DNA of 63,912 nucleotides, filler included, from Parasitella parasitica NRRL 2501 (GCA_025201805.1; 14 parts of 14 records of this genome joined end to end with filler, not necessarily neighbours in it), one strand, 5' to 3'; numbered from the whole stretch's first letter, positions 2,312 through 55,680 are shown. The notes: generated from the letters alone by a model not told the origin. Translations and numbers: made by a program.

Positions 2312-2619
2312 TGATTTATCAGAATGAGAAATTATTCAAATAAAACGGTTGTGAATTAATCAGGTAAAGATCTCGTTTATTACATGGAAAAAATAATGGT
2401 TTATATACTAGTGAATCTAAGTGGACTGATGGGAGGATAAGATACAAGTGTGAGACATGGTGTGATTTAGAGAATGGAACGATAGATCGTATCTATTGTC
2501 CATGAACATGTCATGTTGAGTTATAAATAAGGAACATGATCCATTGGGATATGTTCCTGAATTGTGTTCACGATTGAGTTTACTTGAGTTTGACTTCCGG
2601 TTGGGAAATTGACACATCA
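2312..2619. mobile_element. Solo LTR (family L2, 308 bp) with 5-bp TSD AGGAT
   Basis: TGATTTATCA...TGACACATCA termini; AGGAT at 2307-2311 and 2620-2624. Copies at 30365-30675 and 48849-49160. Confidence 0.9.
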
Positions 2620-4648: not shown

Positions 4649-5250
4649 TGTGGATATAATATCCATATTTCATACATCAATCATCAGTTCATGCTATATT
4701 TGAATCATGAGTGTACTACTCAATAGATATTATCAAATGTGTACATAGTCGGAAGAATAGAATAACCAACATATAANNNNNNNNNNNNNNNNNNNNNNNN
4801 NNNNNNNNNNNNNNNNNNNNNNNNNNNNNNNNNNNNNNNNNNNNNNNNNNNNNNNNNNNNNNNNNNNNNNNNNNNNNNNNNNNNNNNNNNNNNNNNNNNN
4901 NNNNNNNNNNNNNNNNNNNNNNNNNNNNNNNNNNNNNNNNNNNNNNNNNNNNNNNNNNNNNNNNNNNNNNNNNNNNNNNNNNNNNNNNNNNNNNNNNNNN
5001 NNNNNNNNNNNNNNNNNNNNNNNNNNNNNNNNNNNNNNNNNNNNNNNNNNNNNNNNNNNNNNNNNNNNNNNNNNNNNNNNNNNNNNNNNNNNNNNNNNNN
5101 NNNNNNNNNNNNNNNNNNNNNNNNNNNNNNNNNNNNNNNNNNNNNNNNNNNNNNNNNNNNNNNNNNNNNNNNNNNNNNNNNNNNNNNNNNNNNNNNNNNN
5201 NNNNNNNNNNNNNNNNTCAAGAACCAAATCAGGTCAACGCTCTCGAGGTT

Positions 5251-6856
5251 ATGAATTCAAGATTATCCAATGCAAAGCTACAATTGAGCAAGATCCATCT
5301 CGAGGCTGGTGAACAATACTCAGCTGAAGACGTCAAAGCTGCAAACGAAGCTCAAGAACTAGTCAATTGGCTCACTACCCAAATTAACGCAATGACAAGG
5401 AAGGCTGAAACCTCAGGAACTAGAGCAATAAATACAAATGAATTGCCCTTGTTCCAGCTCACCAACCAACCTGTCTATTGGTCTAACCATCCTCGTTACA
5501 CTTCCACCGATCATTTCTTCAGCACCTTTGAAAATGTTGTACATGCTTCGGGAAACAAGGTTGATAACGTCTGGAGGCAGTATATTCCAATCTCAATGCC
5601 ATTCGAATATGAAAATTGGACAAAAAATGATTTGATGGCATGTTCAACTTGGGAAGAGGCAAAAGCACTCTTTCGAAAAGCACTATGGTACTCCTGTTAA
5701 TAAGGAAGAATCAATGGCAAAACTATTCAATTTACGCATGAAAGTATCCGACACCTTGCAAAACTACACGAACCTGTTCGTTAAGTATGTTCAAGATTCT
5801 GGTTTTTCAGTCAAAAGCAATTTGCTGGCCAACTTTTATCGTTTCACACTGCTCCGCAAGAACAAGCAGATGATGATCAACCAAATGAAGATACAGCACT
5901 CAGATCCAGATTATAAATGGACTATCAACGAGATTTATGAATGCGTGTTGCCTTTATTTCTGGTTGACGAACAAGAGCTGGATGATAGACCAGAAGAATA
6001 TCGGAGCAAGCGAAAAGCTGAAGGCAGTATTGGTACTGTTGGTACGAGCAAGTCTCCCAAGGTCGAGGCATCAGCTGGGTTCTTCTGTCCCAGACACGGA
6101 GGTAGTCGAGCAAACCATGATTCTAAGGATTGCCACTCCAAGGTTAAACAGTTTGGTTCTGAGAACAAACCTAACCGGGCTACTATTGCATCGACATCCT
6201 CTAATACTGGAAGTTCCACATCCTCTGGAAGACCAAAAGATTGTTCGTACTGCACCAAACCTCATTTCTTTGGTCATAGATGTCGCGAATACTATGTTGC
6301 TAAAGCTGCTGAATACCGCAATAGGGATATTGGGGTTGCTACTGTTGGCACCACCGCCAAAACAAAAATGACGCCTACTATTAATGACAGTGGTAACACT
6401 GCTACTAGTAACGCTACCAAACACGAAGATACTATTATGGGAGAGCTAGATGCTGAGCTGGATGCTCAAGACGCAGCTATTGCCTGTAAGTTCCATGTTA
6501 AAAAAGAAAAATTTAATCCTTTTCAGTTATTGACTCCTATCATTCTAGAGAGCAAAGAAAACAAACCAGTCAGATGTATTGCAAAAATTGATACTGGCGC
6601 AGATGTTTCTTTTTTAAATAAACACGTATTTCATAATAAATTGCTGTTCACATCTAATGATATCATTAAAGTTGAAGGCAATTTAAACTTTCTGAATTCC
6701 TCCAATAGACGTTTGGGTTATACACCAGCAATCAAAATTAAATATTTAAATGACATCGCATTCAATCATTCATTTGAACTGGCAGATTTCAATCAGAATT
6801 TGGGCAACTTCGATATACTCCTGGGAGTAGACACTTTAAGCCAACTTCGAATATAG
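5251..6856 (+). pseudogene. Gag with Cys/His knuckles plus aspartic protease (frameshift near 5680)
   Basis: ORFs 5251-5700 and 5714-6856. Cys/His clusters CPRH...HDSKDC and CSYC...GHRC; protease motifs KIDTGA and DILLGVD. Confidence 0.85.
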
Positions 6857-9800
6857 GGCTAACAGGTGTTGCACACAAATTCCCTGATGTAACAAGCTTG
6901 AGTGATAAAGAAAGAGCAGAATTACTCAATACTATCGACTTTGAAAATGTAAATTTTGACTCCAAGCACTCAATAAACCCTGAAACCGCATCCATTTTTC
7001 AATCTAAACTAGAAGAAAAGGAGTTTATGAGCCAAATTCAGGACGCTATCGCTGAAAATCAGCAAATAAAACCCGGCACCTTTTGCAACGTGCCTGAATC
7101 CGAGATTGTAATACCCATTAAAGAAAATGTTGACTATTATGTCAAACAATATCCCATAGCATATCATTCTCTACCAGAAATACAGAAACAATTAGATGAA
7201 TGGTTAGAAGCAGGGATTGTTGAGCCGTGCCGGCCTAATGGTCTGTTCAACAGTCCATTGATTGCTGTCGCCAAGAAAGATAATGATGGTAAACCCACCA
7301 AAACTAGAGTGTGTATGGATGTTCGTAGAATTAACCAGCATATGCCTAACAACACCAATCAATTTGAGATTCCAAACATCCAAGATATATTTACTAGAAT
7401 TAAGTAAAACGGAACTGTTTTTTCAAAAATCGACTTAAAAAACGCATATTTTTCGTTTAAAATAGCAGATCAGAGTAAGGACGTTTTGTTGTTTAATTTT
7501 AAAGGAATTACATACAGATGGGTTGGATGCTGCTTTGGATTGCGGCCAATCACATCGGTGTTTTCCTCTGTTATGAACATCTTATTCTCTGATTTAGAAG
7601 GGATTGAAATATATGTTGATGACCTGTGTTTATACAGTACAGACCCTGTGTCGCATTGTAAACTAATTAATGAAGTTCTTAGGAGACTCACAAATGCTAA
7701 CTTAAAGATTGGTCTCGAGAAATGTACCTGGTTCCGATCTAGTATTTATCTACTAGGCTTTGTTATAGGACCACAGGTTTCCAAAGTTGACATGAGACGC
7801 TTATCTGATATTGGCCATTGGGGTCCTTGTAGATCCGCAAAACAAGTAAAGCAATTAGCAGGTGTTATCTCGTATCTAAGACCTCATATACCTATGTTGG
7901 CTAAAATCATGGCACTAATTGATGCACTTCGAAATGATCCTAATGCTGGTAGCAAATGGACGGATGACCATACAGAGAGACTTGAGATTATAAAAAAAAT
8001 CCTTCTATCTGAAGCGCTATTAACTGCACCCAACATGAACAAAAAATTTTATCTTGAATGTGATGCCAGTTTATATGCGATTGCAGTAATTTAAACCCAA
8101 AGAGATGATCTTGGGCGTACAGTCTACATAGCCATGCTCAGTAAAAGCCTGACAAAAACACAGCAAAACTGGCCTGTGCTAAGACGCGAACTATATGCCA
8201 TCTTGTTTGGCTTGGTCCGTCTACGTTCTGTGTTGTATGGACATCCTGAGATCGAGGTAATGACCGATCATCGTGCTCTGGTATATCTTTATACATGTAA
8301 ATGTCCTACCAGAGTTATTCAAAATTATATGGAAATATTAAACGAGTACCCACAATTGCAATTCACGCACATCAGAGGACTCGATAATATTCTACCTGAC
8401 AGAATCAGTCGCTTGTATGAACCTTTAGAGGATCCTACAGAGCTGGCGGAGGACAATGACAAGAAAAATGCTAAATTAGAAAAAAATATTATGAGAAGCA
8501 AAGGCTCCAAAAAACGGTTTCTTCCTGATAATAACAACCAAGAGAAACATTTTGCAACAAAGCAAAAACTCATTTATAATAAAGATAAGAACCTGAATGT
8601 TCTTGCTATAAAAATTAAGAACCGAACATATGAAGGCATAACATACATTGCACCACCCGAAAATGAAAGGGACAAGTTACTACGAGAGATCCATCAATTT
8701 GGACATTTTGGTAGTACCAGTATTGTAAAGAAATTGCATGAAGATGGAATTCATTGGACAGGCCTATACGATGATGCAAAAGCAGTTTGTCAATCATGTA
8801 TGGAATGTGCAAGACATAATGTTGTTCAAAGAGGATATCATGAACTAAAAAACATAGTAGCTTATGCACCATTTGATCACATAGGAATTGACTTCCTAGG
8901 GCCTTTACCGCGAACTAACAGTGGAAATATCTATATCCTCGTTGTATATGACCTTTGCACAAGATTCATTATAACTCGTGCATTACCAAATAAACAATCA
9001 GATACTGTTGCAAAAGCATTGGTCGCTATATTTTGTGATTTTGGTGTACCTGAGATCGTGATGTCCGATAACGGCCGCGAATTCAAGAGCCAATTTATGA
9101 GTCAAATTACAAAAGCATTAGGCATCAACCATCGTTACGCAACTGCCTTCCATAGTAGAGGAAACGGTGCAACTGAATCTGGTGTGAAAGCAGTAATAAA
9201 TACGCTTCGGAAAATGATAAACGATCATATCTATGACTGGGACTCAGTACTGCCGGGTTGTCAACTAGCCATCAATACGAGGATTAGGTATCGCACGGAA
9301 AGTGCACCTTTCCAGTTGATGTTCGCAAGACCATTGAATAGGTTCCGTGACTATAACGATCCCAAAATCAGAGATAACTTACCAAAAAATCCAATGACCC
9401 TCAAAGAGCTCCAAAAAAAAGCCGAAGTAATGAACAGCATTGTTTTTCCTGCTATAAACCAAAGAACTCAACGAATAGTAGAAGAGCAAGCGAAACGCTT
9501 TAATAAGAATCACACGATCAGACACTTTGAGGTTGGTGATTGGGTTATGGTGCGCCTTCCACATCGAGAAAGCAAACTTGAGGCCGCGTATGCTGGTCCA
9601 TTTCAAATAGTTCAGCGTAAAAGATCTACATACGTACTAAAAGATGACATGAATGAACTACTGCATCGCGACTATGTACCATCTGAATTGAAGTTGGTTG
9701 CTATTGATGAAACAATCATTGAACAAGAAGTTTTTGAAGTAGATGAAATTCGAGCGCATCGTGGACCAGAGCATAGCAGAGAATACCTAGTTAAATGGAA

Positions 9801-34450: not shown

Positions 34451-35128
34451 TTTTTTGCTGCTTCTCTACTTCTATTACGCTATTATGTTACTTTTATATA
34501 CTCTTATACCTGATCATCTACAATCCAAACGCATGCAATTTGTGTTCATTATTGCTGGTATTCTACGTTGTACCTCTTTGATTCTGGGTAAAGTCGATTT
34601 TTTTTCTTAAAAACAGTAAATAATACCCACGTTTTCTAAAAGACCATGACTAACACTTTCATACGCGTTTTTATAGTATCTATCACACGAAAGCAATATC
34701 CAGAATGGCATCTTTCTAGTGCAGTAGTTCATTCAGGTATTATCATTTTTTACTATGTTTTTGTAAGAGCTTTTTTACTAATTGAAAACCCTTTTGTTTT
34801 ACATTTGTAGTTTCGGTTCTCTTTTGATGTCAAGTGGATGGCCTATCACTGAAACTTGACATTATGTTTTTATCCGGGTCATACAGGAGCATGTAGGCTG
34901 TTTCTACTCATTGACTGTGCTTACCCTAGCAGTTCTTGAGATGGGCCATTTTATCCTAAGCTGTGAAGTGTGGTAAGGCGTTTTCCGGCTATTTAGGGTG
35001 GGGTATTCATTGAAAATCTACCAATTTCTATTTTTGGTCGAATTTCAAGCCCCGCTAACAACAAAACAGGGGGAAACCCTGTTTTTTTGTTTTTAGGATT
35101 TAGGGGTTGACTTAGCCAAATTAATCGT
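34451..35128. repeat. Repeat family A copy
   Basis: High identity to about 695-1352. Confidence 0.85.
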
Positions 35129-35267
35129 AATTTTATAATAAAAATCTATATAATTAAAAAAATGGAGTCTGCAAACTTTTTTACAATCTTCGTAAAAAAC
35201 AGTCGCATTCCAGCTCAGGTTATTCAATTAATAAAACAATGGCACTTTTTATTACTACGAAAACAAA

Positions 35268-35492
35268 ATGCCTGCTACTATTAGAATTTGTTTAAGCTGT
35301 GATCAAGAAGGCCATTCACGTTCTACAAGCAGGCTTCGCCTCAATAATACCCGTTCTAACAGTAGCACTTGCGCAAGCTGTGGTGGTATAGACCATCGTC
35401 AATTTTCTCATCGTGATGGCGCTTACAACATTGCTAATCGTATGTCTCAAATTTGTTTTCATTCTACAATCATAATCAAACTTTTCGTATAG
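35268..35492 (+). pseudogene. Cys/His knuckle fragment, probably a transposon (Helitron-like) protein N-terminus
   Basis: Two CxxC-x4-H motifs (CLSCDQEGH, CASCGGIDH). Confidence 0.4.
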
Positions 35493-35817
35493 ACTAGGGC
35501 CTCAACCTAAAACTATGGAAATAGTGTTATGCGCAGAGGATATATAAATATGATCTGCTCAAAAAAATGTATAACTTTATAGAAATAAAATCAGACACAA
35601 AAACTAATGACTTTATTGATAAGAAAATGCCATCTCTTTATACTAGATTATATCTATTGTAACACTATTTGTCATCATGGTTAAACATTGAACTTGGTAT
35701 GTAATACCAAGTTTATTACATGTTCTACTGTACATTAATAGCTTATTCCTTGTCATTGTATACAAAGAATTACCAATCTAATAATTGCTTAATCTCATGC
35801 CTTTCTGGCACAACATA

Positions 35818-36357
35818 CATTCGGTCATCACAATATGCAATGTTTGCGCTAAGCATGCATTAAGAAGCCAATAGAAAACACCGCTACAAGGTCATCTCAA
35901 CATTTGATAGCAATGCATGTATAAACAAAAATATACTTTATTCAAGTATATTGCTACTGGTGCTAGCATTATCATAACCAGCGGCTTTTTTTTCATCATC
36001 TTCAGCAATACTTTGGTTAATAGTAGGTACTTTTTCGACACTTTTTGCTCTCAAATGAACATTTGTATGATTGTGCGTGCATAAATAAACTTTTACTCAA
36101 AACAGATGAGATCTTTGGAATGCAACATCTCAACAAATATTTGGTAGCAACTGTGACTACAAGCACAGAAAAACCGAAATGTCTCAGAAATAATATTATA
36201 TAATTGAAAATGAGCTATCTCAACTTTTTTTTATAAACGCACATTCTGGGGCAAAATCATTTATGTTCTCACAAGCACATAAATGCTCCCATGACCCTAA
36301 TAATATTCTCATTTGAGCACATTTATGTTCACCGAGAACATCCAGGAGGCCATAGTG
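35818..36357 (-). mobile_element. CACTA element end truncating the host Helitron
   Basis: Reverse complement starts CACTATGGCCTCCTGGATGTTCTC at 36357; homologous to 48610-49473; GAGCACAT subterminal repeats. Confidence 0.8.
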
Positions 36358-37429
36358 GCATTCCGTTGTCTTTCCAGATGAATTTGAAGTCTTGGATGTG
36401 ATGGATATTCTTTATGCAAGGAAAAGAGTGAAAAATGCGCCAGCATGCCTCAGAAGCAGAGACATGCCGGCGGGCATCTAAAAACTGCTTAATTTCATCG
36501 TTTCCTTCTATGGTTTGGCCAAATGTTACCACATAGTCCATGCATCATGCTTTTTATTACTGTTTGGTAAGCTAAAGGTTGAAGCTGTGGATCAGGAATC
36601 TTTGCTGAAACAATCTTGTCAATATCTTCTACAGTCCGAGGTTTATCGGCATCAGATACAATCAAAAGAATGTGTGCGAGAAGGCCTCGTTTCTGAAACT
36701 CAATGACATGTATGTGAGCAACAACTTTTCCTAAAATCTGCTTTAAGATCAAGTCTTCCATAAAAACACTGAGTTTCTTTTGGAAGACACCGGCACAAAG
36801 ATCAGGACGATCAGGGGTTGTCTGATTGGCATGTAAGAGCTCGCGTTGAATCTCGGGCCACTTTGGATTGCATGTGAAGGTGATGAAAAAGTCGGGCTTT
36901 CCAAACCTTGTTACGATGCTGATGGCGTCCTGGTATAGCTGCTGCATGTAACGTGCTGATCCAATAAATAAGCTTGGTAAAATCACGCTACGGCCAACTA
37001 TACTCAAATCGGTGGATCCATCTTCCAATCTTACTGCATCTTCTAAACCACTCAGTAAATGCGATCTTAGTAACTTTTGATTGTGTCTAAGAAACTGAAG
37101 ACGTTGTTGCTCAATCTTGGCGTACATATCCACAATGAACTGCTGAAACAAATTGCCACCTCTAATCTTTAATTTAAAAGCATAGTAGTTCATAGCAGTT
37201 ACTTTTTTGCCACTCAAAGAGACGATCTCAATATTTTAACTTGGGGTGCCATAAGGAAACATCAAGACATAGGCCATCGTGTCATACCATTGATTCAATT
37301 CACTTATTCTCTAAGAGGACCTCCATTTGTAGGTCGTATTACAATGTCTCTTGTTGTTTCTGGGTTATCGTTTCCAACAATGAGTACACCAATAATCTCG
37401 GTGGTGCGTTGTATCTCTTTCAATCTAGT
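36358..37429 (-). pseudogene. Canonical Helitron Rep (3' part of the host disrupted by the TIR element)
   Basis: LFQQFIVDMYAKIEQQRL, GKPDFFITFTCNPKWPEI, EFQKRGLLAHILL, RHVSASEACWRIF. Frameshifts and deletions. Confidence 0.92.
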
Positions 37430-37731
37430 GGATGACTTCCAAAACTAAAAAATGAATAAATTTTATTCATTTGTCAACTCCGTTAGATTGAGATTCGTCC
37501 CGATATAAACCACGATTTATTTGCGTTTATTCACGTCAATAAAGGTTGTTAATATCAGTATAAAACTTCGATTTTATTGAGACATTGTGGTTCGATGGCT
37601 TTTTACATTTGATGTACAAGAAATCAAGATTACTATTTTATAATATTCATACAAGAACAGAGCAAATATAAATTAAAAATGAAGAATATTTCTTTATTAT
37701 TAAGCCTCTGTTTGAGTTTTGCAATTCCATT

Positions 37732-40700
37732 CTAGTTGCTTTGAGCTTTCGAGAAGTCGGGATTGTATAAATCTTGTTGGCTATCGTTTGAATTTTTTTT
37801 TCTTGAAATGTTTATAGCGTCAACATCAACGCCATATTTTCTTTTTATGCTCAAAGGCAAAGAAGCGCCAAAAAAAAATAGGTTAGAGGCCTTTTTGACC
37901 CTCGACATTGCAACATAGAGCTGACCGTGGGTTAACATGTTGTCAAGGAATATCCCAACACAATCGATAGTTGCACTTTGTGCTTTGTGTATTGTGGATG
38001 CAAATGCAGGGATAATTGGGAATTGTGATCTGACATAACTTGTTCCTGGTACTTGTCTTGTAATTCTTTGTATCCAATATAATTGTTCTTCGCCATGCTC
38101 TTCATCATTGTCAGAAAACTTTCTCAAACATATATTATCTTCATCCACTTCTACAACGCATGCAATGGTTCCATTCACCCAGCCCAGCCTGATACTCATA
38201 TTTTGTAACAGCATCACAGGCATACCGACTTTCAAACATAGATCTTCCAGTAGACGTGTCTCTTTTAACGCTTTTCTTGCAGTGCCAACAGTACCTACAA
38301 AAGCATCAATGGCCTTGAATTTTACTTCTTCGCTTGGAAAGTCTTTGAAATCTCTTTCATTGGCATTTTTGACCCTTTCTCGTGTTGTGTATAACCGCAA
38401 GCAGTTTAACGGCAGGCTTTTTTTGTAAACTGTCCTTTGATTTATGAATTTAATGACATTTTCGTCAAAATACCCCAAACGAACTTTGTTTAGTATTTCT
38501 ATAAACTCTGCCTCGTTTTGTCTAACAGGATAAAGCAAATCATAGCGGTTAACAGCGTTGTAGATGTGTGTGGCCCATATGCAAGATTCATTCTTCTTAA
38601 CTGGCAAGAGCTGGGCAATGTCTCCGAAGAAAATTGTCTTGACCCCACCCATGATTGCTGGTCTATTCGTGGTTTTTACCAATGCATCATTCATTGACTT
38701 CAAGAGAGTTGCGCTAATCATAGAGTATTCGTCTATGAGTAAAACAAGCTTTGGGTAGAGCTTAATGTATTCATCTAGAATTTGAAAGTTGGGTACTATT
38801 GATTGGTTGGCCATGCCAAAAAAACGGTGCAATGTTTGTCCACCTATGTTGTGGGCTGCTACGCCTGTTGGAGCTAACTTGAACACCTTTACGGCCATGG
38901 TTAGTTTTTTCCAACAATTAATTAATTTAAACAATGTGAAGTACCCATACTTTATATCCTTTCAATCGGTAGTATCTTTCAAGCATCCTAAGCACATAAG
39001 ACTTACCAGTTCCAGCTGCCCCGCTGGCAAATACTGCTGAATTTACTTCCATCTCATGTCTGATCTGGTTAAATATACACTTCTGATCATCATTGGCACT
39101 GTCCAGCATAATTTTCAACTCTCGTTTCGTCACCTTTTCTCCCCTATCAAGGTCTACGATGTCGCCTAAAGTGCGAACATTTGATTTTCCGGTAGAAGGT
39201 TCGATTCCCCCTTCCTCTATTGGTATGCTAATCAGGTGCTCGTAGTAGTCTTTCCAGGAATGGTACATTCCTCTTTCCTTTTCAAATGTAGTATCAAAAA
39301 TAGATTTCTTTGTAACGACTTGTTGATAGTAGAATGTTTCTCCATTCATTTCATTTTCATTAAAGGTTCTCCAGAAAGCTACTCTATCTTTTGTTCTCAA
39401 TACAAATGTTACTTTCCCACTATTTACGAATTTGGGCAAGTCAGAGGCAGCATAAAACCTTCTATTCACTATTTCTTGAGCTTGTGTCTTCAAAGAATTA
39501 TCTGGAGATTGCGATTTACGAATGTAAAAGCAAAAGAACTCTGGCAACTTCAATTGATTTGCACCATCTCTGTTTTCATATATTTCTACGTGAGATTTGG
39601 CATATATATCTTCAGATTCTTGCGGAATAGTTTTAACATCGTCTCTTATTCTTAAAGAACTGTGGCCATACAAAGCTGTTTTGATAAATATAACATTTCT
39701 TGAATTGTTATGCTTGTGCCAACCTAGCAAGTCGTAAGCAGCTTCAACTGCGCCAACAATTCTTGTCTTTAGATGTTCAGACTCTTTGATATATGCGGAT
39801 TTTTGATAATGACCTTGATTAGTTTTTCCAACATTTTTAAACGTAACGGTAGCGCTGTAATCGTCTTTTGCCATGTACTTGGCAAGATATCTGACTGCCT
39901 GCGGACCATCGTTATACTGAATATCCATATTAGATCTAAACACAGCCAACAAATACGGGTTATAATTGTTAACCATGCAATCAGTGACATCCCTCCGATA
40001 AATAACTTGATGGTTTTCGTCCATGTATGTCACCGGTGATTCAGGCTTTGGAAATCCAAAACGACATGGCCGATCTGGTTGTCCTCTTTTACAATAGCTA
40101 CGTAAAAAGCAAAATACAATTAGTTTTGATATTGTGTATACACATATAAACAGATAAAAATTTTTCCCCCACGTACTTATCATTGCAAGTATGTAGCTGA
40201 TGAGTGTTGACTAAGTGATGCATTAACGGATCGTTTTGAAAAACCCCTGGTGGAAAACTTGTGCATACCACGTTCATATCAATAAGCTGTTGGACAGTCT
40301 TTTCAGTCCAGAGCACAAGATGAATGTGTGGGCTCCCCCTATCTTGCAGTTCCATAACCCAGCTGTGTTCTTTTATGCCTCCAATCTGATCAGCGAAATT
40401 GCCCAATATGTACTTGCTAAAAAAATGTAACCATTTCCTTTTCCAATGAGCAACAAAAGCAACTGGATCCTCCCACGGATACTCAGTATCAGGAATTAAA
40501 TTTTTAAAGTCAAGGCTGTTGTCATGACAAGTAAAAGTAAGAAACAACTGTGGAGATCCTAGATTGTCAAAAATGCATTGTAGATCCAAAAAGTTTTTGC
40601 GCTTGTAAGCATATGATGATCGAATTTGGGGTGGAACAGTTGAAACCAGATTTTTGTTTAGTTTTTTAGTTGCATTGTTGACAATATCGCTTTGTTTTGA

Positions 40701-41899
40701 TTTCTCGGTTCTTCCTTTTGTCGATACTACAAACCTGTTTGCAGTTGCAATATTCATCTTTTCCAGCAGATCCAGCATAAAAAAGAGAAAGGAAGGGTCT
40801 TTAGCAAATCTCCTGTCCCTCATCAACAGCCGGGATTTTGCAAAACTAGCAAGTGATTCACCACGCAATGTTGCAAGCGTTACTCCGCCCCTATTCTCTG
40901 GTATATCATAGGCAAGCTGTTCCAATGGTGTTGAGAACTCTGGCAATGGTTTGGTTTTGGACATCATTGAAAAATGGCCTGAGCTTGTTGTAAATAAATG
41001 AGGAAATGAAAGCGCTATTAAACTTGGGTGCGAATATTTGATACGTTTTCCTTCGTTATCTTCTCCAATGATGAGATCCCTGAATTCTTCATTACTAGCT
41101 TCTGGATTAGTATCCTCCATTGCAAATAGAGCATTGCTCTTCCAATTGGTAGCAGATCCAATATGCTTTCTATTTTCACTGACATGATAGTTAACCAATG
41201 AATATGTAAGCTTTGGCAATTTATATCTTGCAAGAAGAGGGTTCACATTTTGTAAACATTGATATATTGTTTGAAATTTTTCTTTGTCGATTGCTTCAGG
41301 TTGTCCGCGCTGAAAATACAAACTCAATGTTCCACCGTAAGCCATTTCAGTGAATTCGTAATTATGCATGGTATTTACGGACCCTGTCATTACATAATGA
41401 CCTATTCTTCCATGTTTCATAGTTGATTTACGTGTAATTTGAGAATACAGCTTGATTGGAGATAAGACTGATCTTTCTCGATAATTTAAATCATTCATTC
41501 CAGGTACCAAATCACCTTTGTATGCAAAATATTGATAAGCAGCAGTTAGATGTAAATGCTCTCGAGTTACAAATAAAGCAATAATATACCTGAATAAGCA
41601 AACCTGACGACTTTCTCCTCTTCAGTCTTTCTATGCTTTGCGCATACCATAATAAAGTTTTTATTTCTGCCTGTTTCTTTGATGAGTGGCTGCATTTTCC
41701 AGTCAATGCAAGGTAGATCCTGAGGATTTGCAATTTTTCGATATTTCTGATCTTCTGGATAGAGCATCTTCATGCAAATGCAACAATATCCATTTGGCTT
41801 TCTACTGATAAATTTTTGGAAACTTTCTATTTGTTCCGTTTGATCATCAGTAAAAGTAGATAGGTCACTATTTTCACGTCGAAATCTGAATATAGACAT
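37732..41899 (-). CDS. Rep-helicase: HUH Y2 endonuclease + Pif1 (SF1B) helicase, 1316 aa, 4 exons
   Basis: Exons 41899-41590, 41515-40177, 40097-38951 and 38886-37732 total 3951 nt in frame with GT-AG introns. Motifs LFLTFTC, ELQDRGSPHIHLVLW, CRFGFP, YLAKYMAK, GAAGTGKS, APTGVAA, IDEYSM, GDIAQLLPV, TIHKAQ, GQLYVAMSRV. Confidence 0.93.
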
Positions 41900-41980
41900 T
41901 GAATCAATTGATGAAAAAGAAAAAAAAAGTAAGTAAAAGAAAACAAAAAAAAAAAAAAAAAAAAAATTTATTTTAAATGG

Positions 41981-42017
<37 letters not shown>

Positions 42018-42019
<2 letters not shown>

Positions 42020-42925
42020 AGCCCTCAACAATATTATCAGTATCATCAGTGTTATCAGCACCATCGGCTTCCTCATCAACAAAAATAGGCGGTGGAGCAG
42101 TAAGCTCCACAGGAAAAGGTTCATTATTATTTAAAAGCTTAGTAAGAGTCATCTCTGCATGCTCCCAGTCGACCTTTGGAACAGCAGGATTGTAGGTATA
42201 CTCAATGTCTCGTCTTCTTTCTGCAAGATTAAATCTTAATCTTGAGCGCATTATTCTCTCTGTTACGAGGACAGGATTCAGGTTTTCACCATCAATAATG
42301 ATGCCATTCTCGCCTATGAATATAATTAAAAATAAGTAAAAGTATAAAAAGCAGAATCAGGTTTTTTTCACCCACACAAATCCTCATGAAGATCGCTCAA
42401 GTAATGAGCCAAAGGCTCTTTATTCAACTTGTCCTGGCGGACATGGTGTTCATCATCAACGTTTTGCCAGACAAACTTGTACATCATGTATCTTAATTTT
42501 AACATGGAATCATTGTCATAATTATCCGCTAGCATTCTGATTGCTTCGGATGGTATAATTTCGTTGTTGTCGTCCACATTGGCGTAGGGGCGCACACCGA
42601 ATACATTCAAGCGCAAATTAATGAACGCTCTCGTGTCGTCTTCATTGGTGTAGGCGTACGCGTTTAAAGCACCTTAATTTTAGAAATTAGTCAGCTATGA
42701 TGTGCTGAATAAAGCTTTAATATCATACATACCAATGAAATGATGGCGAGTTTTTTTTTTAAAAAAACGAATAAAATAGTACATTAATGCATAGTTCTGA
42801 ATGAATAAATTTGGACGAAGTCCACTATCCATACACTTGGCCTGCAGGCTCAAGCTTCTCCCAATAACCCGAAAGAGTATCCTGTCATTCAGTGGCTGTG
42901 AATCTGTTAACTCTCCCAGAAGCAT
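42018..42925 (-). CDS. Unknown element-borne protein, 261 aa, 3 exons
   Basis: Exons 42925-42733, 42672-42376 and 42313-42018 total 786 nt and splice in frame through GT-AG introns. Acidic C-terminus. Confidence 0.75.
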
Positions 42926-44173
42926 TTAAATTTTTTTATACAAAGCAAAATAAGAAAGAAAATTTGTTATTGAAAACTTGCATGCAAACATTTATTATAT
43001 CGAGAAGAGGATCTAGCGACGAGCGTCAAGCGTTGGTAACTTGGGATCGCGAAAGAGAATGAGAACGTGAACGTACATGAAATGGCGCAATATACTATAA
43101 TCAAGGGCAAAACGTTTTATATATCCACCTCAATGCATTTGAATATAACTGCTATTATGCATATATCGTAATATATCATGCAAAATTATCACTGTAGCAC
43201 TTTTTGCACAAAGAATTAGTTGCTGTATGCGCTCCTATTATTATCAATAGCTTTAGACTTGATAGCAGCGTTACAAGTAGGATTGTGAATGATATTGTAC
43301 ATGTGCATTTGTAGGAGTATCTATCACTACTACTTGGAAAAAGTGGGCTTGAACAAGAAGTACCTCGAAAGTAGTGTAGTCAACATGTTGTATATATCCA
43401 CTGCTACAAACACAAATATCTTTTATGCAAAAGCATGCATTTTTATACAACAGCTTATTTGCATCATGTACCAGAAACTCAATACGTTGTTTTGGCAAAT
43501 AAGCACGTTGTTATATTGATCTAAATCATTATATATACAAAGATAAATGATGGTTACGTAGTATAAAATACTCGTTAATGTGTTGTACATCAATGGATAT
43601 GTTGTTGTCTGCGTCGCAATAATCTGAATGTCCTTTTATTGCCCCAAAAAACATGTAGCCTGATCACTTTACAAAACATGGACTAGTAGATATAAAATAG
43701 TATACAGTATTCAAGAACGAGTTAATGCATATGAATACATATAGTATATTCGAAAAAAAAAAACGAGTCAGTGCATATGTATGATTTCTTTATGCCGCAC
43801 ACAGACCAGTAGTTACAAACAAGCACACTGCATTGTTTATTGCTCCTAATCGCAGCTGTCAACTTTTTCAGCAGATCCTGATTGGTGAGAGCTCCGGTTA
43901 AGGCGTTCAAAATAGGGGCAAGAGTTTTGAAATGTCTGTAGGCACCTTTTCTTCTGTTCTAAAAATATAATTAATCCAAGCACTATGAATTCAATCATAT
44001 CAACATTTTTTGGATTAGTTTTTCCTCATACAGTTCAAGTGGACGACCCAACAAATCAAGTATATATTCTGCTATATGAACTGTATTCTGCGTAAGTCCA
44101 GTATATTGAAAAAAAAAAACCATCTAGATAATTATATTATATATAAGCACTTATACAAGCACAACACGTGTAG

Positions 44174-44997
44174 GCGTTACAGTGTAAAGACAGTTGTGGA
44201 TAAACAAACTTTTCTGGATGCGATAAGCAGCTATAATAACACCTGGACAGTCGAGTCATTGGTAGAGTTAAAGGAACCTCTGATTATGGTTGTTTCTGGA
44301 TCAATGAGACAGCAATCGGCGGATAGGACTTATTTAGGAGATTCTGTGGAGGAAAAGTTTCATCTGAGGGCAGTTTCCATGGCAGTTATTCCTTGCATTC
44401 CTTTTACTGCAAACAAACTAAAAAAAATGATACACCCAAACATTGCACCTATACAGCTAGAGGAAGGCCTGAAAGAAGGTTATTTTCTAGTGAATCTTTC
44501 TGCACAACAAGATTTTCAACAAGACCCAGAGTTTCATTTTTTCAATGGCTATCAACCACAGGGGGAAGCAGATGATCTTGGTATTACTACAATTTTCTCG
44601 TTAAATACATACTCAAGTTGAGTGTATAAACTAACGAACCAATATTGTTTTAGACGTCATGCTTGCTGACAGTGATGAAGAGAGCCGGCATGAAGATAGC
44701 GAAGAATTAAGGGCATCATCCACGATCCGATCTAGAAAGCAGAATACCATGAATCAAGGTGAGGTTGATGAAGAAGAAGAGTTTTTGAATACGTTTGCAG
44801 ATATATCGGGGCTTGAGCGATTTAATGATGAACCATCATCTATATCTGGGCAGATTCAGAGAGGCGGTAAGAATTATATCCTTGATACCGTTTGTCAATA
44901 CATTTTGCTCATTTTTAACGCTAAAAAGAGCCATCAACCCAGCCTTTTGAAAGACAAACAACAGAAGAAATTCTTGAAGAAAATCGAAGGTTACTAA
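44174..44997 (+). CDS. Putative OB-fold ssDNA-binding protein (core exon 44174-44580 plus acidic exon; 5' exons unresolved)
   Basis: About 55% ungapped identity to the ORF at 63403-63882 with matching intron positions. LIMVVSGSMRQQ...G..EEKFHLRAVSM resembles the SSB beta4-beta5 pattern (inference). Confidence 0.6.
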
Positions 44998-45697
44998 GTA
45001 GCATGAGTCCTGAAGCAGTGGAAGATAAAGAAAAAAATGTTGGTTTAGTAGAAAACGAAGATACAGAATGTAAGTACTATCACAAAGAAACACTTTTTTT
45101 TTTGGGGATTTTCTTTCGATGCTATTCAAATTGGCTGCATTTTACATTTTATATGGTACTGTATATATTACTTTTCATTATTGCAGTTCCTATTATGTTC
45201 AACAAAAGGTGCTCTTCATATGGTAAAGAAAGCTACTTGTGTGCATACATATAAATGTCGTGCCTCTTTTTGAACGTATTGATATAAGCTTAATAAAACT
45301 TAAATACGTGATTATAGGATGCATTAAAATCCATATATTTTGCAAATTATTAAATAGCCAATGCGCTGCTTTTATAATATGATATGCTAACAAGAAAGTT
45401 TGCTGTAGCGGAAGATTTATACCTTAAAAGTACCCCTACTGTTTTCACTAATAGAAAAGGCAAGCAGAAAGAAACTGGTGTGGAGCCTATAGCTGACGTT
45501 TAGAAAACAATCAAAGGGAAGGGACCTACAGATGTTAAGAAAAAAGACAAAGGAAAAGAGCGTGCTGATCCTATTCTGGGTCTTCAAGGAAGAGAAATTG
45601 ATAAGGAGCGTTTCCACTCTTTACTCAATGTTGGTGAGTACTAAATTGGCGTATTATACCTCACTTAATAATCAAGTCTTCTCATATGTTTTGATAG

Positions 45698-46389
45698 ACA
45701 ACAGCAGTGGTGTATTCCATAAGAAGGTATCGAAACGTATTATCGTAGACGATAGCGATGATTCTGAATATGACGATGTAAATTTTTATGATGACAATGT
45801 TTTCACTGAATTAACATATATTTGTATTGCAACACAGGAGACTCATAGAAAAAGAGCAAAGAGTAGCAGTGCATCATTGGCATCTGCAACACCATCACGG
45901 TCTCTATCGATATCTTCAGATTTGTCAAAAACAACGCTGAAATCTTCAACATACACAGTATCAGAAAATTCAATGTCGGTAGCATCAGATTCAGCAGGAT
46001 ACTTAACAGCAGAATCTCCAATATCTATAGCATCTTCTGTCACTGGAGATAGTGAAAGTATTACTTCATCAATACAATCATCATCTGAAATAGATGATGC
46101 CGTATCTTCCATGAATTTGAATTCTACCACAAAAAGACCAAGAGGAAGACCAAGAAAATCTCGTCCTCCCGTGCCTGCGGATGTCTCTCAACTTACTAGA
46201 CGGAAGCCAGGAAGACCAGGGCGTCCAAGAAAACAATCAGTTTTACGAAGTTCAACTGATCATATGGGGCCATTAGACGGTTTTTTTAAGAAGTTAACAT
46301 TTTCTCATCCTAGACCTTCTTCATCATCTTCTAGACCTTCTTCATCGTCTCCTAGACCTTCTTCGTCGTCTTCGAAAACTAATACATAA
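45698..46389 (+). CDS. Ser-rich AT-hook region, likely the terminal exon(s) of the SSB-like gene
   Basis: KRPRGRPRK and RRKPGRPGRPRK within a Ser-rich ORF ending at 46389. Confidence 0.55.
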
Positions 46390-47834
46390 AACTCCTCATT
46401 TAATCAACTGTGGAATCTGGTTTTCAACTGCGTTTGCTACACACTGCAGCTCAACAGTAAAACTACCGCAGTATCTTACGACGCTTTTAATACGTACATG
46501 AAGTTGTTTTTACTGATTTTATTCAAAGTCTGAAATGCATAAAATCATTTCAGTGTTTTTTTGTGTATAAATTAATACTCTCAACGAATTTATATATGAT
46601 ATTACTATATTTGCGTTTGACTTAAAAAACCAGGCGTCCAGTATATCTGAAGCAATTTTACCAAATGCTCTACTGCATGTAGTAACCAGCTAACAAAAAA
46701 TTTACTCGCTAGGCACACACGCTTACAATTTTGAAGGCATCATGAACGTGGTCAAACCTTATGACATTTTATACCTACTAACACACGTTAGATTAATATA
46801 CTACTTCATAAAACAATTTTATTGTAACTTCCAAGGTCTTATTCACCGAATAATGTTTTATTTGAGCATCCTAAACATTCAACATATATATAATAAAAAT
46901 TTTATGCGAACGCTCTATATAGAACCTTGAAGATAATCAAGCAGGAGGTAAAAAAGGGGCAAATAAAATCCATAATATGATCTTGCTGTATATTGTTTAT
47001 TTTCAAAAACTATTTAAAAATATACAAAAACCCATTAAAAATACAAAAGTTGTATTTATTTATTGTAAAGATTCTAAAAAGTAGATATACTCGATTGATG
47101 TTTTCTGAAAAATGTATTTTTGCTGATTTAAAGGGAAGACAAAACACCGTATCTGGACTATTTTTGCTGTCTTTATTTCGGATAATACACTCACTTTTCA
47201 AAAACTATTTAAAAATAACTAAACATTTTAGAAAAAAATTATAAAAAAAATATGTACGTATGCACCAAAGCATAAATTAAACTATTGTGCAATAAAGCTT
47301 TAAATCGAAGACAATTAAGCAGTGTAAATCATGTTCAAAGTCGAGCGAAAAAGCTTGAATTTCTCGAAACTGAACACGGTCTAACTAAAAAAGGCGATTT
47401 TTTATGCTGTAAATTTGGTTCTAATTAATAATATGTTAATATTAAGTTAAAGGTGCTTTTGTTTACAAATAATACAAATGAACGAAAACACACGAAGTAA
47501 AGGTGCATCGTAAAGATAAAATAAGGACGAAGACGGAGACAACAAAGATTAGGGGGAAGAAAAAGATGTGAATAAGAAAATGTTAAGGACGTCAGAGGCA
47601 AAAGCCCTAAGCGTGATTAAATGCTATGGAGTGGTTTTTTTTTTTGCATAATTCTTTATTCATCGTTTAATTTGGCCTCTACCCCCTCGTCAGATTTGGC
47701 TGTAAATCACAAAAAGTGAATTTATTTTATTCACTCGTTATTCACGTCTTTTGAACATCCGAATATTTTCAATCCCAATTGAATAACAGATTTATTCACG
47801 ATTTTATTTATTCATTGAGTTTTGGAAGTCGTCC

Positions 47835-48417
47835 AGTATACCTTCAGCTCTAAATACCATTGAGACATCAGGAACAGAGCTAGGGTTCTCTGCAATCAAC
47901 TGAGCTATTGACTTGAAATCATGGACAAAACAATTTATGTCATGCATAAGTGCTTGAAGGTTGATCAAGGTGGCGATGTTAAGATGCTGGTTGTGAGCAT
48001 GGCGGTTTCGAATCTCATTTCCAGAGTCGTGGATATAAATTTGAGCAAATTTAGGTGCCTCACCTTACTCCTGGATGCAAGATTCCAATTCTATTATGAT
48101 AAAGGCTGCCATGAATTTTAAATGAATAGGCGCCTACACGTGTATTGGCTACTGTCGAGTCAAGGTTACAACCTAGTGAGGTGAACCCCATAGCACTGTT
48201 GTAAGCTCTTAGGTTTGACCTAAACTCCTTGCTTTGTTTGTCTGATCCTCTCAATAAATTGGCAATCAACTCAGGCATCTCGGGCAAACATATTTACACT
48301 TGCCACAGCACAAAGAGAAATCAGGGTTTGCAATCGTGCCTCCATTCTTTTCTGATGCCCACATGCGTGCTTGACAATGGCGACAAATGCTGTTGTTCAT
48401 TCCACCAAGGTCATGGC
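47835..48417 (-). pseudogene. Canonical Helitron (5' part of the disrupted host)
   Basis: SKEFRSNLRAYNSAMGFTSLG...YSFKIHGSLYH, and LQALMHDINCFVHDFKS...MVFRAEGI adjacent to the right TIR. Confidence 0.9.
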
Positions 48418-53397: not shown

Positions 53398-55680
53398 TAC
53401 TGTATATTCTTCCAATCGTGCCTCCAAACCCACGTCTTCTGGGCGCCCACTCTTTGGCCTTTTTTGTTCATGCCACACGTATTGCTCCGGAAAGTTTGGG
53501 TATAGTATGCCTCTTGCGTTTACATCGGTTTGGTTGATCTTGAACCAAGCGGTAAGAGTTGTCTCTTGAATCATTGATCTTTGTATGACAATGCTAATGT
53601 CATCGTCTTCATTAAAATAAACAGGATTTTCACCCTCCAAATAAATAGCCAGTCGTTGATGAGCAGGAAATTCTCTGTGCATACTAAATGAAAATAGTCT
53701 CCAACACGCTTCTGGTGCGGAAACATATTTAGCATCGATAAAAGCTTTGATTTCATCTTGTTGTTCGACTGACATGGAAGCTCGATCATGCCCTTTGTAA
53801 ACATACTTATAAAAGTATTTGATGCTATTAATTGATGAACATAGCTCCACATTAATATGAGCATCGTATTTGGTGCAGAGGTAAAGATTATGGGATACCA
53901 CCCATCTGTTATCTATGTTAATGTTCTGTCTGTTCACAACTTTTGTTACAAATCTGCCGTTGTTTCGTCTTCTATAAATTGGATAACCACCCCCTTCATT
54001 GGTAGATGTTTCTTCAGTAAAATCTCGTGAATATTTTTTTGTACAGCAACCAAGAACAGGGTCCATGCATGCAGCGTCTGTATTAAGCAATTCATGTCCA
54101 GGAACCATATTTTTAACAACAGTTTCATAAGCTAAAGGATATCTGGTATCTCGGCAGAAATGATCTTGTCGTAATCATCAGCCGTTTGCGGCTTATCAGC
54201 AGGGTCGACTATGAGAAGAATATGTGCGTGTGGGAGGCCTCTTTTCTGATATTCGATAGTATAAATATATGCAATTGCTTTTCCCAAAACATTCTTTTTT
54301 GTCAAATCATTCATAACCTCACGAAGCTTTAAATAAAAGACTCTCGTACATAAATCCGGACGATCAGAAGCCTTTTGATTGAACAGAAGACTACTTTGGA
54401 TCTCTGGCCATGATGGATTTCAGGTAAAGTTGATGAAGAAGTCGGGCTTTCCAAAGCGTCTAACAATACTTAGGGCACCCTGATAAAGTTGAACCATGTG
54501 TCTAGGACCCCTAATGGAAGATGATGGCAAGATTACTTTGATGCTAGTGCGAGATAATATCTCTGCTGTATTGTTGCCATCACTAAAATCATTGGCTTCT
54601 ACAGCATCTACTAAACCTTGATAGTGTTCACATTTTAGACGACTTTGGTTAAGGCGAATGTAAGAAAAAGCCTATTCTGTTCCATCTTTGCATACATGCC
54701 CACAATAAACTGATGAAACAAATGAAGATGATGCTCTCTTTGTGGTCGATACATAAGCTTAAATGAATAATATTCCATTACAGAAACCTTTCCATTGCCC
54801 AAAGTGTTGTACGTATTGATGTTCCATCCTGTTTCACCCTCTGGAAATAAAAGAACATAATGCAATGGGTCGTAGAACTGATTCATTTCGCTGATCCTGC
54901 TCAAACTGTTATCTCTCAACTTAATAACAATATCGCGGGCTGATGGGTTTGGATTGCTCTCATCTGCGTTGCCTCCTATGATTACGAGTCCAATTTCAGA
55001 TTCTCCCGTCGGTCTATTGTATCATCTACGATCTGGTAATCCTTCAGCTCTAAATACCATCTTAATCTCCTCAAGGTCATCAATGCTGGCTCCCGCTTGA
55101 TTACCTGCTCTTCCCCTTTTTGTTCATTGGCAATTTTTATCAGGGATCTACGGCCTTATTAGATAATCAGGGACAGAGTACTAAGAGAAGATATGCAGAA
55201 GTTTATTTCAAATAAGGAGGAGGCTATGATTTAATAAGGGAAAGGTGGAGAAAGATAAGAAGATTGCTAGGGATATTTAATAAGGGAATTCGATGAGGAG
55301 ATCTGACGAAGGAAACTTTTCTTTGCTGGTCAAAATGGCCTCTATTTATACTTTTTTGCGAGCTGTCTAGTTCACTGAAATGTGAACTAGATTATTTACT
55401 ATAGCGTGAATCAATTAGGTAAATAGGATATCGTGGATCAATAAGTCAATAGTATAATGTGGATGAGTAAGGCAAGAATGACAGTGTGAATCAGAGAGGC
55501 AAGAATGCAATGTGGATTGATTAGGGAAGAACGAGGTGATATATATTTTTAGATCAAGATGTATAATTGTTTGGGCTTGAAGGATCGACAGGTTCATGAC
55601 AATTTCAATCATACTCTTAAAATGTTGCACGTGAGGATTTAATCCGCGCATCATACGTTGTAAACAATCTAAAGCTGTGC
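53398..55680 (-). pseudogene. Decayed canonical Helitron Rep
   Basis: YDPLHYVLLFPEGETGW, EYQKRGLPHAHIL, HINVE, IKYFYKYVYKGHD, YVSAPEACWRLF. Stops and frameshifts; interrupted by a ~460-bp insertion flanked by GTTCAT (55122-55127 and 55592-55597). Confidence 0.92.

What the first reader, a model, noticed from the sequence alone, without database searches (positions are those of the whole stretch)
37430..47834. TIR-bounded 10.4-kb element with an HUH Rep-Pif1 protein, a 3-bp flanking repeat and no DDE transposase: candidate new rolling-circle element type
Seen: 17-bp inverted repeats at the exact termini (GGAYGACTTCCAAAACT) and AGT directly outside both ends. Excising the element restores the host Helitron frame MVFRAEGI|LD*KRYNAP, which matches the uninterrupted paralogue near 55010-55060 (MVFRAEGLPDRR*YNRP), so the boundaries are independently fixed. 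Cargo is an intact RepHel, an intact unknown gene and an SSB-like gene; no DDE, integrase or tyrosine-recombinase motif is visible. Established: canonical Helitrons have TC...CTRR ends with no TIR or TSD, and Helentron/Helitron2 elements have subterminal or asymmetric IRs in T-rich targets. Inference: an HUH element with symmetric ends is a different architecture, resembling IS91-like or linear ssDNA replicons. Novelty cannot be confirmed without a search.
Basis: partly seen in the sequence, partly recalled or inferred. Interest (0 to 1): 0.93.

Follow-up and report, generated by a model that had tools for sequence, protein, structure and literature searches.

The report
Helitron2-like transposon with flush inverted ends
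A 10.4-kb jumping gene of the fungus Parasitella parasitica carries its own rolling-circle enzyme and inverted-repeat ends; this fits the known Helitron2 group, with a few odd end features seen so far in one copy only.

Summary
The observation largely holds. A 10,405-bp insertion (37430-47834) splits a dead canonical Helitron of Parasitella parasitica. It ends in 17-nt inverted repeats (16/17), which extend to about 31 nt with one indel, and AGT lies outside both ends. It encodes an intact, intron-bearing RepHel (HUH, YxxxY, Walker A/B), a conserved divergent companion gene of unknown function and a conserved upstream ORF. Pfam finds no DDE, integrase or tyrosine-recombinase domain.

The claim of a new rolling-circle type is mostly not upheld. 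RepHel elements with 8-18-nt terminal inverted repeats and a 3' hairpin are the described Helitron2/Helentron (HLE2) group. This RepHel is far from canonical HLE1.

Real departures from HLE2:
- Both repeats are flush with the ends.
- The hairpin lies inside the 3' repeat.
- The target is not T/T.
- DUF6570 is not detected.
- 3 nt are repeated at the flanks.

All of these rest on one copy. I found no second copy with ends, and the paralogue that fixes the empty site lies outside my piece. A 3-nt match arises by chance about 2% of the time.

Verdict: a Mucorales lineage of Helitron2-like elements with variant termini. The target-site duplication is unproven.

The parts
37427..37429 (.). AGT directly outside the left end (one copy of the putative 3-bp duplication)
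37430..37446 (+). Left terminal inverted repeat GGATGACTTCCAAAACT, which is the 3' end in RepHel orientation
37450..37472 (.). Palindrome AAATGAATAAA-T-TTTATTCATTT (11-bp stem) just inside the left repeat. One arm (37451-37461) is also the inner part of the extended inverted repeat.
   Evidence: Sequence. In the DNA fold the terminal 121 nt give z = -3.3.
37527..37534 (-). Subterminal GTGAATAA motif at the RepHel 3' end, on the same strand as the copies at the other end
37732..41870 (-). RepHel gene. Exons are about 41402(41510)-40173, 40099-38939 and 38889-37735, with the stop at 37732-37734. Introns are about 73 and 49 nt, and there is at least one further upstream exon (...CCICMKML...MVCAKH). 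Motifs: HUH (SPHIHLV), YLAKY, Walker A GAAGTGKS, Walker B LLIDEYSM.
   Evidence: Pfam: Helitron_like_N 1e-28, PIF1 2e-10, Pif1_2B. Translations and splice sites. Colinear at 69-74% aa with the 1177-aa annotated paralogue P0171, with no stops. HUH aligned to Helraiser.
42018..42356 (-). Conserved coding segment between ORF-N and RepHel. Whether it belongs to either gene model is unresolved.
   Evidence: tblastn gives 49% aa identity to L001. No Pfam match.
42368..42925 (-). ORF-N: a conserved upstream gene on the RepHel strand, about 165 aa with one short intron, function unknown
   Evidence: 65-77% aa identity to L001, and also found in L002, L007 and L142. Annotated as a separate gene in L016. 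No Pfam or PDB match.
43985..46389 (+). Companion gene, divergent from RepHel. It has a conserved N-domain of about 140 aa (EEKFH, PCxPL, HP, EGYFxVNLS), then an acidic/Ser-rich tail with AT-hooks (RGRPRK, GRPGRPRK). Annotated in part as BD408DRAFT_350716.
   Evidence: The pairing with RepHel is conserved in L001, L002 and L142.
47727..47799 (-). Three subterminal GTGAATAA motifs (47727-34, 47738-45, 47792-99) at the RepHel 5' end
   Evidence: All 6 matches in the window lie inside the element, against 0.86 expected. TGAATAA occurs 8 times in the terminal 2x130 nt, against 0.1 expected.
47806..47816 (+). Inner part of the extended inverted repeat (ATTTATTCATT)
47818..47834 (-). Right terminal inverted repeat (GGACGACTTCCAAAACT on the minus strand), which is the 5' end in RepHel orientation
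47835..47837 (.). AGT directly outside the right end
34451..37426 (-). Host: the downstream part of a degenerate canonical (HLE1) Helitron, with its Rep domain at 36495-37217
   Evidence: Helitron_like_N 8e-56. Helraiser 1.3e-60. Stops and frameshifts visible.
47838..48417 (-). Host: the upstream part of the same Helitron (Zn-finger-like CxxC, KFAQIYIHD, MVFRAEG)

Best explanation
This is an autonomous Helitron2-type (HLE2-like) rolling-circle transposon of Parasitella parasitica. It belongs to a lineage found so far only in Mucorales and has inserted into a dead canonical Helitron.

Shown:
- An intact HUH-Y2 Rep/Pif1 helicase gene.
- A conserved three-part coding layout: divergent companion gene, ORF-N, RepHel.
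- About 31-nt interrupted inverted repeats.
- A hairpin 21 nt from the RepHel-3' terminus.
- Clustered (C)GTGAATAA motifs lying on the same strand at both ends.

Inferred mechanism:
- RepHel binds the repeated motifs or the hairpin on one strand, nicks at the 5' end and unwinds 5'-3'.
- It terminates where the 3' hairpin and the 5'/3' complementary repeats mark the end, as proposed for Helitron2.
- The single strand, or a circle made from it, is then pasted into a new site.
- The companion protein (AT-hooks, possibly an OB-like domain) probably helps to bind the AT-rich ends or the single-stranded intermediate.

The AGT on both sides is most likely one host copy plus three element or coincidental bases, or a target microhomology. 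It is probably not a staggered-cut duplication.
For: - RepHel domains and motifs, intact against a 1177-aa annotated paralogue.
- No other transposase domain in any frame.
- Far from HLE1: E=4.5e-3 to Helraiser, against 1.3e-60 for the host, and 23% identity to the host Rep.
- The nearest named language-model clusters carry Helitron_like_N together with the HLE2 marker DUF6570.
- The literature defines HLE2 by 8-18-nt inverted repeats plus hairpins, with RepHel in either orientation.
- The hairpin and extended repeat are present.
- TGAATAA motifs are about 80-fold enriched at the ends and are mostly direct rather than mirrored between the two ends. That fits strand-specific recognition.
- Related families (51-62% aa identity) have 3' ends with a hairpin or T-rich terminus. 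Their flanks differ between samples, so these relatives move.
- The companion and RepHel pairing is conserved in other Mucorales.
Against: - DUF6570 is not detected by hmmscan in this family.
- No tree with bona fide HLE2 references could be built.
- The 3' repeat is flush with the end and the hairpin lies inside it, not after it.
- The flanks are not T/T.
- A 3-nt direct repeat at the exact ends is what a cut-and-paste insertion leaves. By chance it would occur about 2% of the time.
- No second copy with ends was found, so the ends, the target and the duplication all rest on one insertion.
- No inverted repeats could be shown in relatives: contigs lacked one end, and the one complete relative, L142, showed none above background.
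Confidence: 0.6

Rival explanations
1. Composite or trans-mobilised element. A Helitron2-like unit, running from (T)CAATGAATAAAT to the hairpin plus T-run, sits between two 17-bp inverted repeats that a cut-and-paste (DDE) transposase encoded elsewhere recognises. That enzyme made the 3-bp duplication.
For: - There are inverted repeats flush with the ends and a 3-nt direct repeat.
- In relatives the RepHel-3' end lies only 0-7 nt beyond a hairpin or T-run. By analogy, this unit could end at ...ATTCATTTTTT, exactly where the 17-nt repeat begins.
- In L018 a hairpin is followed by a 5'-end-like stretch in direct orientation, with no 3' inverted copy.
Against: - The outer element would have no interior of its own: 34 bp in all.
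- No DDE gene was found in the 20 kb available.
- No other copy of the 17-mer is present in any fetched P. parasitica locus.
- The inverted repeat continues past the 17-mer into the supposed inner unit.
- AGT is not the usual TWA target of PIF/Harbinger, and the ends are not CACTA-like.
Confidence: 0.2
2. A genuinely new rolling-circle or HUH element type. Its RepHel, perhaps with the companion protein, integrates through staggered cuts and so leaves symmetric inverted ends and a 3-bp target-site duplication.
For: - The end anatomy.
- No other transposase.
- No DUF6570.
- Conserved partner genes of unknown function.
- Precedent for duplications at some Helitron2 insertions.
Against: - There is one copy only.
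- A 3-nt match is about 2% likely by chance, and it was noticed after the fact.
- The empty site could not be verified here.
- The subterminal motifs are direct, not mirrored, which fits single-strand chemistry and gives no reason for a duplication.
- Relatives show AT-rich, hairpin-type 3' ends like ordinary HLE2.
Confidence: 0.1
3. The terminal 17-nt symmetry is a one-off product of this insertion, not a family feature. It could come from fill-in of a panhandle formed by the inner repeats, or from an inverted partial end.
For: - The inner repeats (AATGAATAAAT) could pair and template a copy of the 5' terminal 17 nt onto the 3' end. The two arms differ by a 3-nt indel exactly at that joint.
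- The closest paralogue, L018, shows no 3' inverted copy.
Against: - Summed contig depth of about 6x single copy over the terminal bin suggests the end region is repeated in the genome.
- The element is otherwise intact and the arms are 16/17 identical.
Confidence: 0.07

Closest known systems
Helitron2 / HLE2 elements (for example Helitron-1_CRe, FoHeli1/2 of Fusarium oxysporum)
   Same: - A RepHel transposase.
- Short inverted repeats at or near both ends.
- A hairpin 8-60 nt from the 3' terminus, one arm of which is the partner of the 5' repeat.
- An extra gene upstream of RepHel.
- Size of 5-11 kb.
- No DDE enzyme.
   Different: - Here both repeats are flush with the ends and longer (17 nt, or about 31 nt interrupted).
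- The hairpin is inside the 3' repeat, not after it.
- The flanks are not T/T or TNAT/T.
- DUF6570 is not detected.
- 3 nt are repeated at the flanks.
HLE2-reverse / Helitron-2_CRe, Helitron-1_DR, FoHeli4/5 (RepHel opposite to the end-defined orientation)
   Same: Read on the window's plus strand, the left repeat pairs with downstream bases to form a 5' hairpin, as described for the Helitron2 5' end. RepHel then lies on the opposite strand. The size is about 10 kb.
   Different: On that reading there is no hairpin and no 20-30-nt tail after the right repeat. The HLE2-reverse stem-loop lies outside the left repeat.
CRe-1,2,3 (non-autonomous Helitron2 of Chlamydomonas) flanked by duplications
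   Same: These are Helitron2 elements with flanking direct repeats.
   Different: Their duplications are 7-19 bp, variable, and tied to one-ended transposition. Here the repeat is 3 nt at a two-ended, autonomous copy.
Canonical Helitron (HLE1; Helraiser), such as the host element in this window
   Same: An HUH-Y2 Rep fused to a Pif1 helicase, and a 3' hairpin.
   Different: - No 5'-TC or CTRR-3' ends, and no A/T target.
- The Rep is only distantly related (E=4.5e-3 to Helraiser).
- It lacks the HLE1 N-terminal motifs (FAQLYI.D, RRYN.P).
Cut-and-paste superfamilies with 3-bp duplications (CACTA/Chapaev, PIF/Harbinger, Zator, Academ); this comparison is from my own knowledge
   Same: Terminal inverted repeats, a 3-nt flanking repeat and subterminal repeated motifs.
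   Different: - No DDE gene.
- The ends are not CACTA and the flank is not TWA.
- The subterminal motifs are direct between the two ends, not mirrored.

Membership tests
Helitron2/Helentron (HLE2) | Encodes RepHel: an HUH Rep with two catalytic Tyr, fused to a Pif1-like helicase | tested here: met
   Helitron_like_N 1e-28, PIF1 and Pif1_2B. HIH, YLAKY and Walker A/B are seen in the translations. Intact against P0171.
Helitron2/Helentron (HLE2) | RepHel clusters with HLE2, not HLE1, in phylogeny | tested here: inconclusive
   It is clearly not HLE1. The nearest named Atlas clusters carry DUF6570. No labelled HLE2 references were available for a tree.
Helitron2/Helentron (HLE2) | DUF6570 domain N-terminal to Rep (the marker proposed in PMC11417382) | tested here: not met
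   hmmscan at E up to 5-10 finds no hit in this protein's exons or in relatives.
Helitron2/Helentron (HLE2) | Short (8-18 nt) inverted repeats at or near both termini | tested here: met
   17 nt, 16/17 identical, flush with both ends, and extended to about 31 nt.
Helitron2/Helentron (HLE2) | 3' repeat subterminal, with the hairpin after it, 20-60 nt from the 3' end | tested here: not met
   A hairpin at 37450-37472 lies 21 nt from the terminus, but inside the outer repeat. Only the inner repeat (AATGAATAAAT) has the classical arrangement.
Helitron2/Helentron (HLE2) | Insertion in T/T (or TNAT/T) without target duplication | tested here: not met
   The flanks are ...TATACT | element | ACTAGA... 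in RepHel orientation, with no TT, and AGT/ACT on both sides. This is one copy only.
Canonical Helitron (HLE1) | 5'-TC ... CTRR-3' ends, a hairpin 10-12 nt from the 3' end, an A/T target | tested here: not met
   The ends read GGAYGAC...GTCRTCC.
Cut-and-paste TIR transposon (DDE) | Encodes, or is mobilised by, a DDE transposase; inverted ends plus a fixed-length duplication | tested here: inconclusive
   Inverted ends are present. There is one 3-nt repeat. No DDE domain is in the element. Other copies or a trans-acting partner were not testable with these tools.
Replitron / IS91-ISCR | HUH Rep without a fused helicase (Y1 in Replitrons); direct repeats or ori/ter ends | tested here: not met
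   The helicase is fused to the Rep, and the Rep has the YxxxY pair. The family definitions are from my own knowledge.

The most novel reading that the evidence does not exclude
A Mucorales lineage of RepHel elements has changed its integration chemistry. With flush symmetric inverted repeats, and perhaps with help from the conserved companion or ORF-N proteins, it inserts through a 3-bp staggered double-strand cut. That would make it the first Helitron-like family with a regular target-site duplication.
Probability: 0.1. Interest if true: 0.85.

Novelty: new variant of a known kind. Interest (0 to 1): 0.45.

Why it matters
If the flush inverted ends and the 3-bp repeat recur in other copies, HUH/RepHel transposition would not always be free of a footprint. 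That bears on how Helitron-like elements are annotated and on how the 3' end is chosen during rolling-circle transfer.

Even on the ordinary reading, three things are useful:
- It documents an apparently intact Helitron2-like family, with two conserved partner genes of unknown function, in early-diverging fungi, where such elements are barely described.
- Related families have different insertion sites in different samples, so they are probably still moving.
- The host, Parasitella parasitica, is a mycoparasite that fuses with its hosts, which makes mobile-element traffic of some interest.

Tried and rejected
- Second copies with ends. I made twelve contig look-ups through RepHel and companion homologues. 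These gave the source contig (L016) and relatives of 50-82% aa identity. None was of the same family with either terminus. The 17-mer, with up to 3-5 mismatches, is absent from all of them.
- Metagenome scan for the 17-mer: 120 hits, all chance, none with the subterminal sequence.
- Viral-contig scan with Rep: nothing.
- Reads. The contigs of the holder run are fragmented here. The exact copy has single-copy depth of about 26, and summed depth at 88% identity or more is about 4-6x. No joint or listed loose end falls at 37429/37430. Three runs with the same species label hold neither the element nor the host Helitron, so no empty site was seen.
- Host paralogue for the empty site: none in any fetched locus.
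- Inverted repeats in relatives: nothing above background in L142, or in the partial L002 and P0033 families. A 12-mer shared by L018 and L140 is at chance level.
- Companion function. There is no Pfam, PDB-sequence or Atlas hit. The first AF2 model was poor (pLDDT 49) and the second was usable (pLDDT 73). Foldseek found nothing at E<=0.001. VIA-align gave only Z<=3.2, mostly OB/SSB folds, which is below any safe threshold.
- ORF-N: no Pfam or PDB hit.
- Spliced gene models were searched exon by exon, by reference.
Full report
**Source and setting**

The piece (34451-48417) is identical to the first 13,967 nt of contig MU619333.1 of Parasitella parasitica assembly GCA_025201805.1 (L016, 100% over 13,967 nt). 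Six public runs from five studies hold about 90% of the element's sampled words. Others with the same species label hold none.

**The observation**

- GGATGACTTCCAAAACT lies at 37430-37446. Its reverse complement, with one T/C difference, lies at 47818-47834.
- With up to 3 mismatches these are the only two occurrences in the piece; 0.10 are expected.
- A local alignment of the two end regions extends the repeat, across a 3-nt indel, to AATGAATAAAT. The score is 42, against 25 or less for the next-best alignments.
- AGT abuts both ends.
- The flanks are one degenerate canonical Helitron on the minus strand. Its Rep ORF (36495-37217) matches Helitron_like_N at 8e-56 and Helraiser at 1.3e-60. 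The right flank carries KFAQIYIHD, aligned to Helraiser residues 231-290.

Two limits apply to the boundary argument:
- A 3-nt repeat keeps the frame whether 0, 1 or 2 copies are removed. Only a close paralogue can count the copies.
- That paralogue is outside my piece, and none exists in any locus I could fetch.

MVFRAEG followed some ten residues later by RYNAP is typical of canonical Helitron proteins (my own knowledge). I therefore accept that host sequence runs to within a few bases of both repeats.

**Coding content**

RepHel lies on the minus strand.
- Three large exons are joined by GT-AG introns of about 73 and 49 nt.
- They are colinear, at 69-74% aa identity and without stops, with the 1177-aa annotated paralogue P0171.
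- It has the HUH motif (SPHIHLV, aligned to Helraiser's HAH), a YLAKY pair, Walker A GAAGTGKS and Walker B LLIDEYSM.
- Pfam hits are Helitron_like_N, PIF1 and Pif1_2B.

Upstream on the same strand there is a conserved ORF of about 165 aa (ORF-N, 42368-42925) and a further conserved segment (42018-42356). Both are 49-77% identical to relatives and have no Pfam or PDB match.

A companion gene is transcribed divergently (43985-46389).
- It has a conserved N-domain of about 140 aa, an acidic/Ser-rich tail and AT-hooks.
- Its family is small: 45 clusters at 50% identity, none with a Pfam domain.
- It sits next to this RepHel lineage in L001, L002 and L142.
- A usable AF2 model (pLDDT 73) has no Foldseek match. 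It has only sub-threshold VIA-align matches (Z 3.2 or less), mostly to OB-fold single-strand-binding proteins. That is a lead, not a finding.

No ORF of 60 aa or more in any frame matches a DDE, integrase or tyrosine-recombinase family. Spliced models were searched exon by exon.

**What kind of RepHel**

- It is only 23% identical to the host's Rep. It reaches E=4.5e-3 against Helraiser, where the host reaches 1.3e-60. It is therefore not HLE1.
- Its homologues are all from Mucorales: Rhizopus, Mucor, Choanephora, Pilaira, Radiomyces and Parasitella.
- hmmscan does not detect DUF6570, the proposed HLE2 marker.
- However, the nearest named language-model clusters carry Helitron_like_N plus DUF6570.
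- I could not build a tree with labelled HLE2 references.

**The ends compared with the literature**

[quoted passage not shown] The 5' one lies 0-2 bp from the end and pairs with downstream bases. The 3' one lies 20-30 bp from the end, just upstream of a hairpin. RepHel may lie in either orientation. A few Helitron2 families are flanked by variable duplications (PMC3627910).
- Fusarium FoHeli elements and Helentrons are similar and insert at TNAT/T or T/T without duplication (PMC5148889, PMC4067079).
- HELIANO treats 11-18-nt inverted repeats as the HLE2 boundaries (PMC11417382).

Here, in RepHel orientation:
- The 5' end reads GGACGACTTCCAAAACT-C-AATGAATAAAT.
- The 3' end reads AAATGAATAAA-A-TTTATTCATTT-TTTAG-TTTTGGAAGTCATCC.
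- The inner repeat and the hairpin, 21 nt from the terminus, match the Helitron2 pattern. The hairpin arm is the partner of the 5' repeat, as in FoHeli1/2.
- What is added is that the outermost 17 nt are also inverted and flush with both ends.
- The terminal 121 nt fold better than shuffles (z = -3.3).
- TGAATAA occurs 8 times in the terminal 2x130 nt, against 0.1 expected. The longer CGTGAATAA copies lie on the RepHel strand at both ends, so they are direct rather than mirrored. That asymmetry fits recognition of one strand, as in HUH chemistry. It fits the two-fold symmetry of a cut-and-paste synaptic complex less well.

**Relatives**

- In the family of L002 (62% aa), contigs from three samples share sequence up to ...GTTTTTATT and then diverge.
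- In the family of P0033 (51% aa), contigs share sequence up to a hairpin (CGAAT...ATTCG) plus ATTTAT. They then diverge into three different flanks.
- These relatives therefore have Helitron-like hairpin or T-rich 3' ends and polymorphic insertion sites.
- Their 5' ends were not on the contigs, so I could not test for inverted repeats.
- The one complete relative on a long contig (L142, 66% nt) shows no repeat above background.
- P. parasitica holds at least four diverged families of this lineage: the window's, L018, L140 and L153.

**Copy number**

In the holder run the exact copy has single-copy depth of about 26. Contigs of 88% identity or more sum to about 4-6x over 37172-38645, including the terminal bin. 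No empty site or alternative flank could be read from that output.

**Weighing**

- The simplest account is a Helitron2-like element with variant termini (confidence 0.6).
- The 3-nt repeat has about a 2% chance of arising by coincidence at this base composition (0.27 per base, cubed). It is also expected if one AGT belongs to the element.
- A composite or trans-mobilised element (0.2) explains the duplication. It needs a 34-bp outer element with no interior, and a DDE partner that was not seen.
- A truly new duplication-making RepHel type (0.1) is not excluded.
- The symmetry could also be a one-off product of this insertion (0.07). L018 shows a 5'-end-like stretch in direct orientation just after a hairpin, which hints at head-to-tail junctions and no 3' inverted copy in the nearest family.

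**Verdict**

The features are real and the element looks autonomous. 'HUH element with inverted ends' is a known kind. The variant details and the duplication need other copies before any claim of a new type.

Noticed in passing
L018:1240-1300: In the closest P. parasitica paralogue (about 80% nt identity in the helicase), a 6-bp hairpin (GCAAAG...CTTTGC) about 450 nt after the RepHel stop is followed at once by CTTTCAAAACTCAACGA. That resembles the window's 5' end, in direct orientation (score 27; 1 of 300 shuffles reach it). It may be a head-to-tail junction. An N gap follows.
   Followed up: partly
window 37420-37431 and 37480-37491: The host flank plus the first 2 nt of the element (TCAATCTAGTGG) is 10/12 complementary to an internal stretch 50 nt inside (CCGTTAGATTGA). 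They pair in the predicted single-strand fold. With one insertion this may be chance. It recalls guide-target pairing in IS608-type HUH transposons (my own knowledge).
   Followed up: no
window 41897-42028: There is a long A-rich/poly(A) tract (poly(T) on the RepHel strand) inside the upstream part of the RepHel gene. It is read as poly-Phe in the raw ORF and is probably intronic.
   Followed up: no
window 46308-46387: Three 21-nt tandem units encode the Ser/Pro/Arg-rich C-terminal tail of the companion protein.
   Followed up: no
L002, L003, L006 (3' flanks); L143, L144, L147: Two related RepHel families have identical elements with different 3' flanks in different SRA samples. That suggests recent or ongoing transposition in other Mucorales.
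   Followed up: partly
window 35540-36360: Short stretches of the left host flank reach contig depths of 1,000-9,000 in all four runs laid. Very high-copy short repeats are embedded in or next to the host Helitron.
   Followed up: no
runs X7-X13 versus X1-X6: Runs with the same species or sample label either hold about 90% of the element's words or next to none. The three non-holders laid also lack the host Helitron at 88% identity. The label may cover diverged strains or species.
   Followed up: partly
L153:8909-12531: An LTR-retrotransposon (Asp_protease, rve) lies 2 kb downstream of the RepHel paralogue P0171. This lineage tends to sit in repeat-rich DNA.
   Followed up: no
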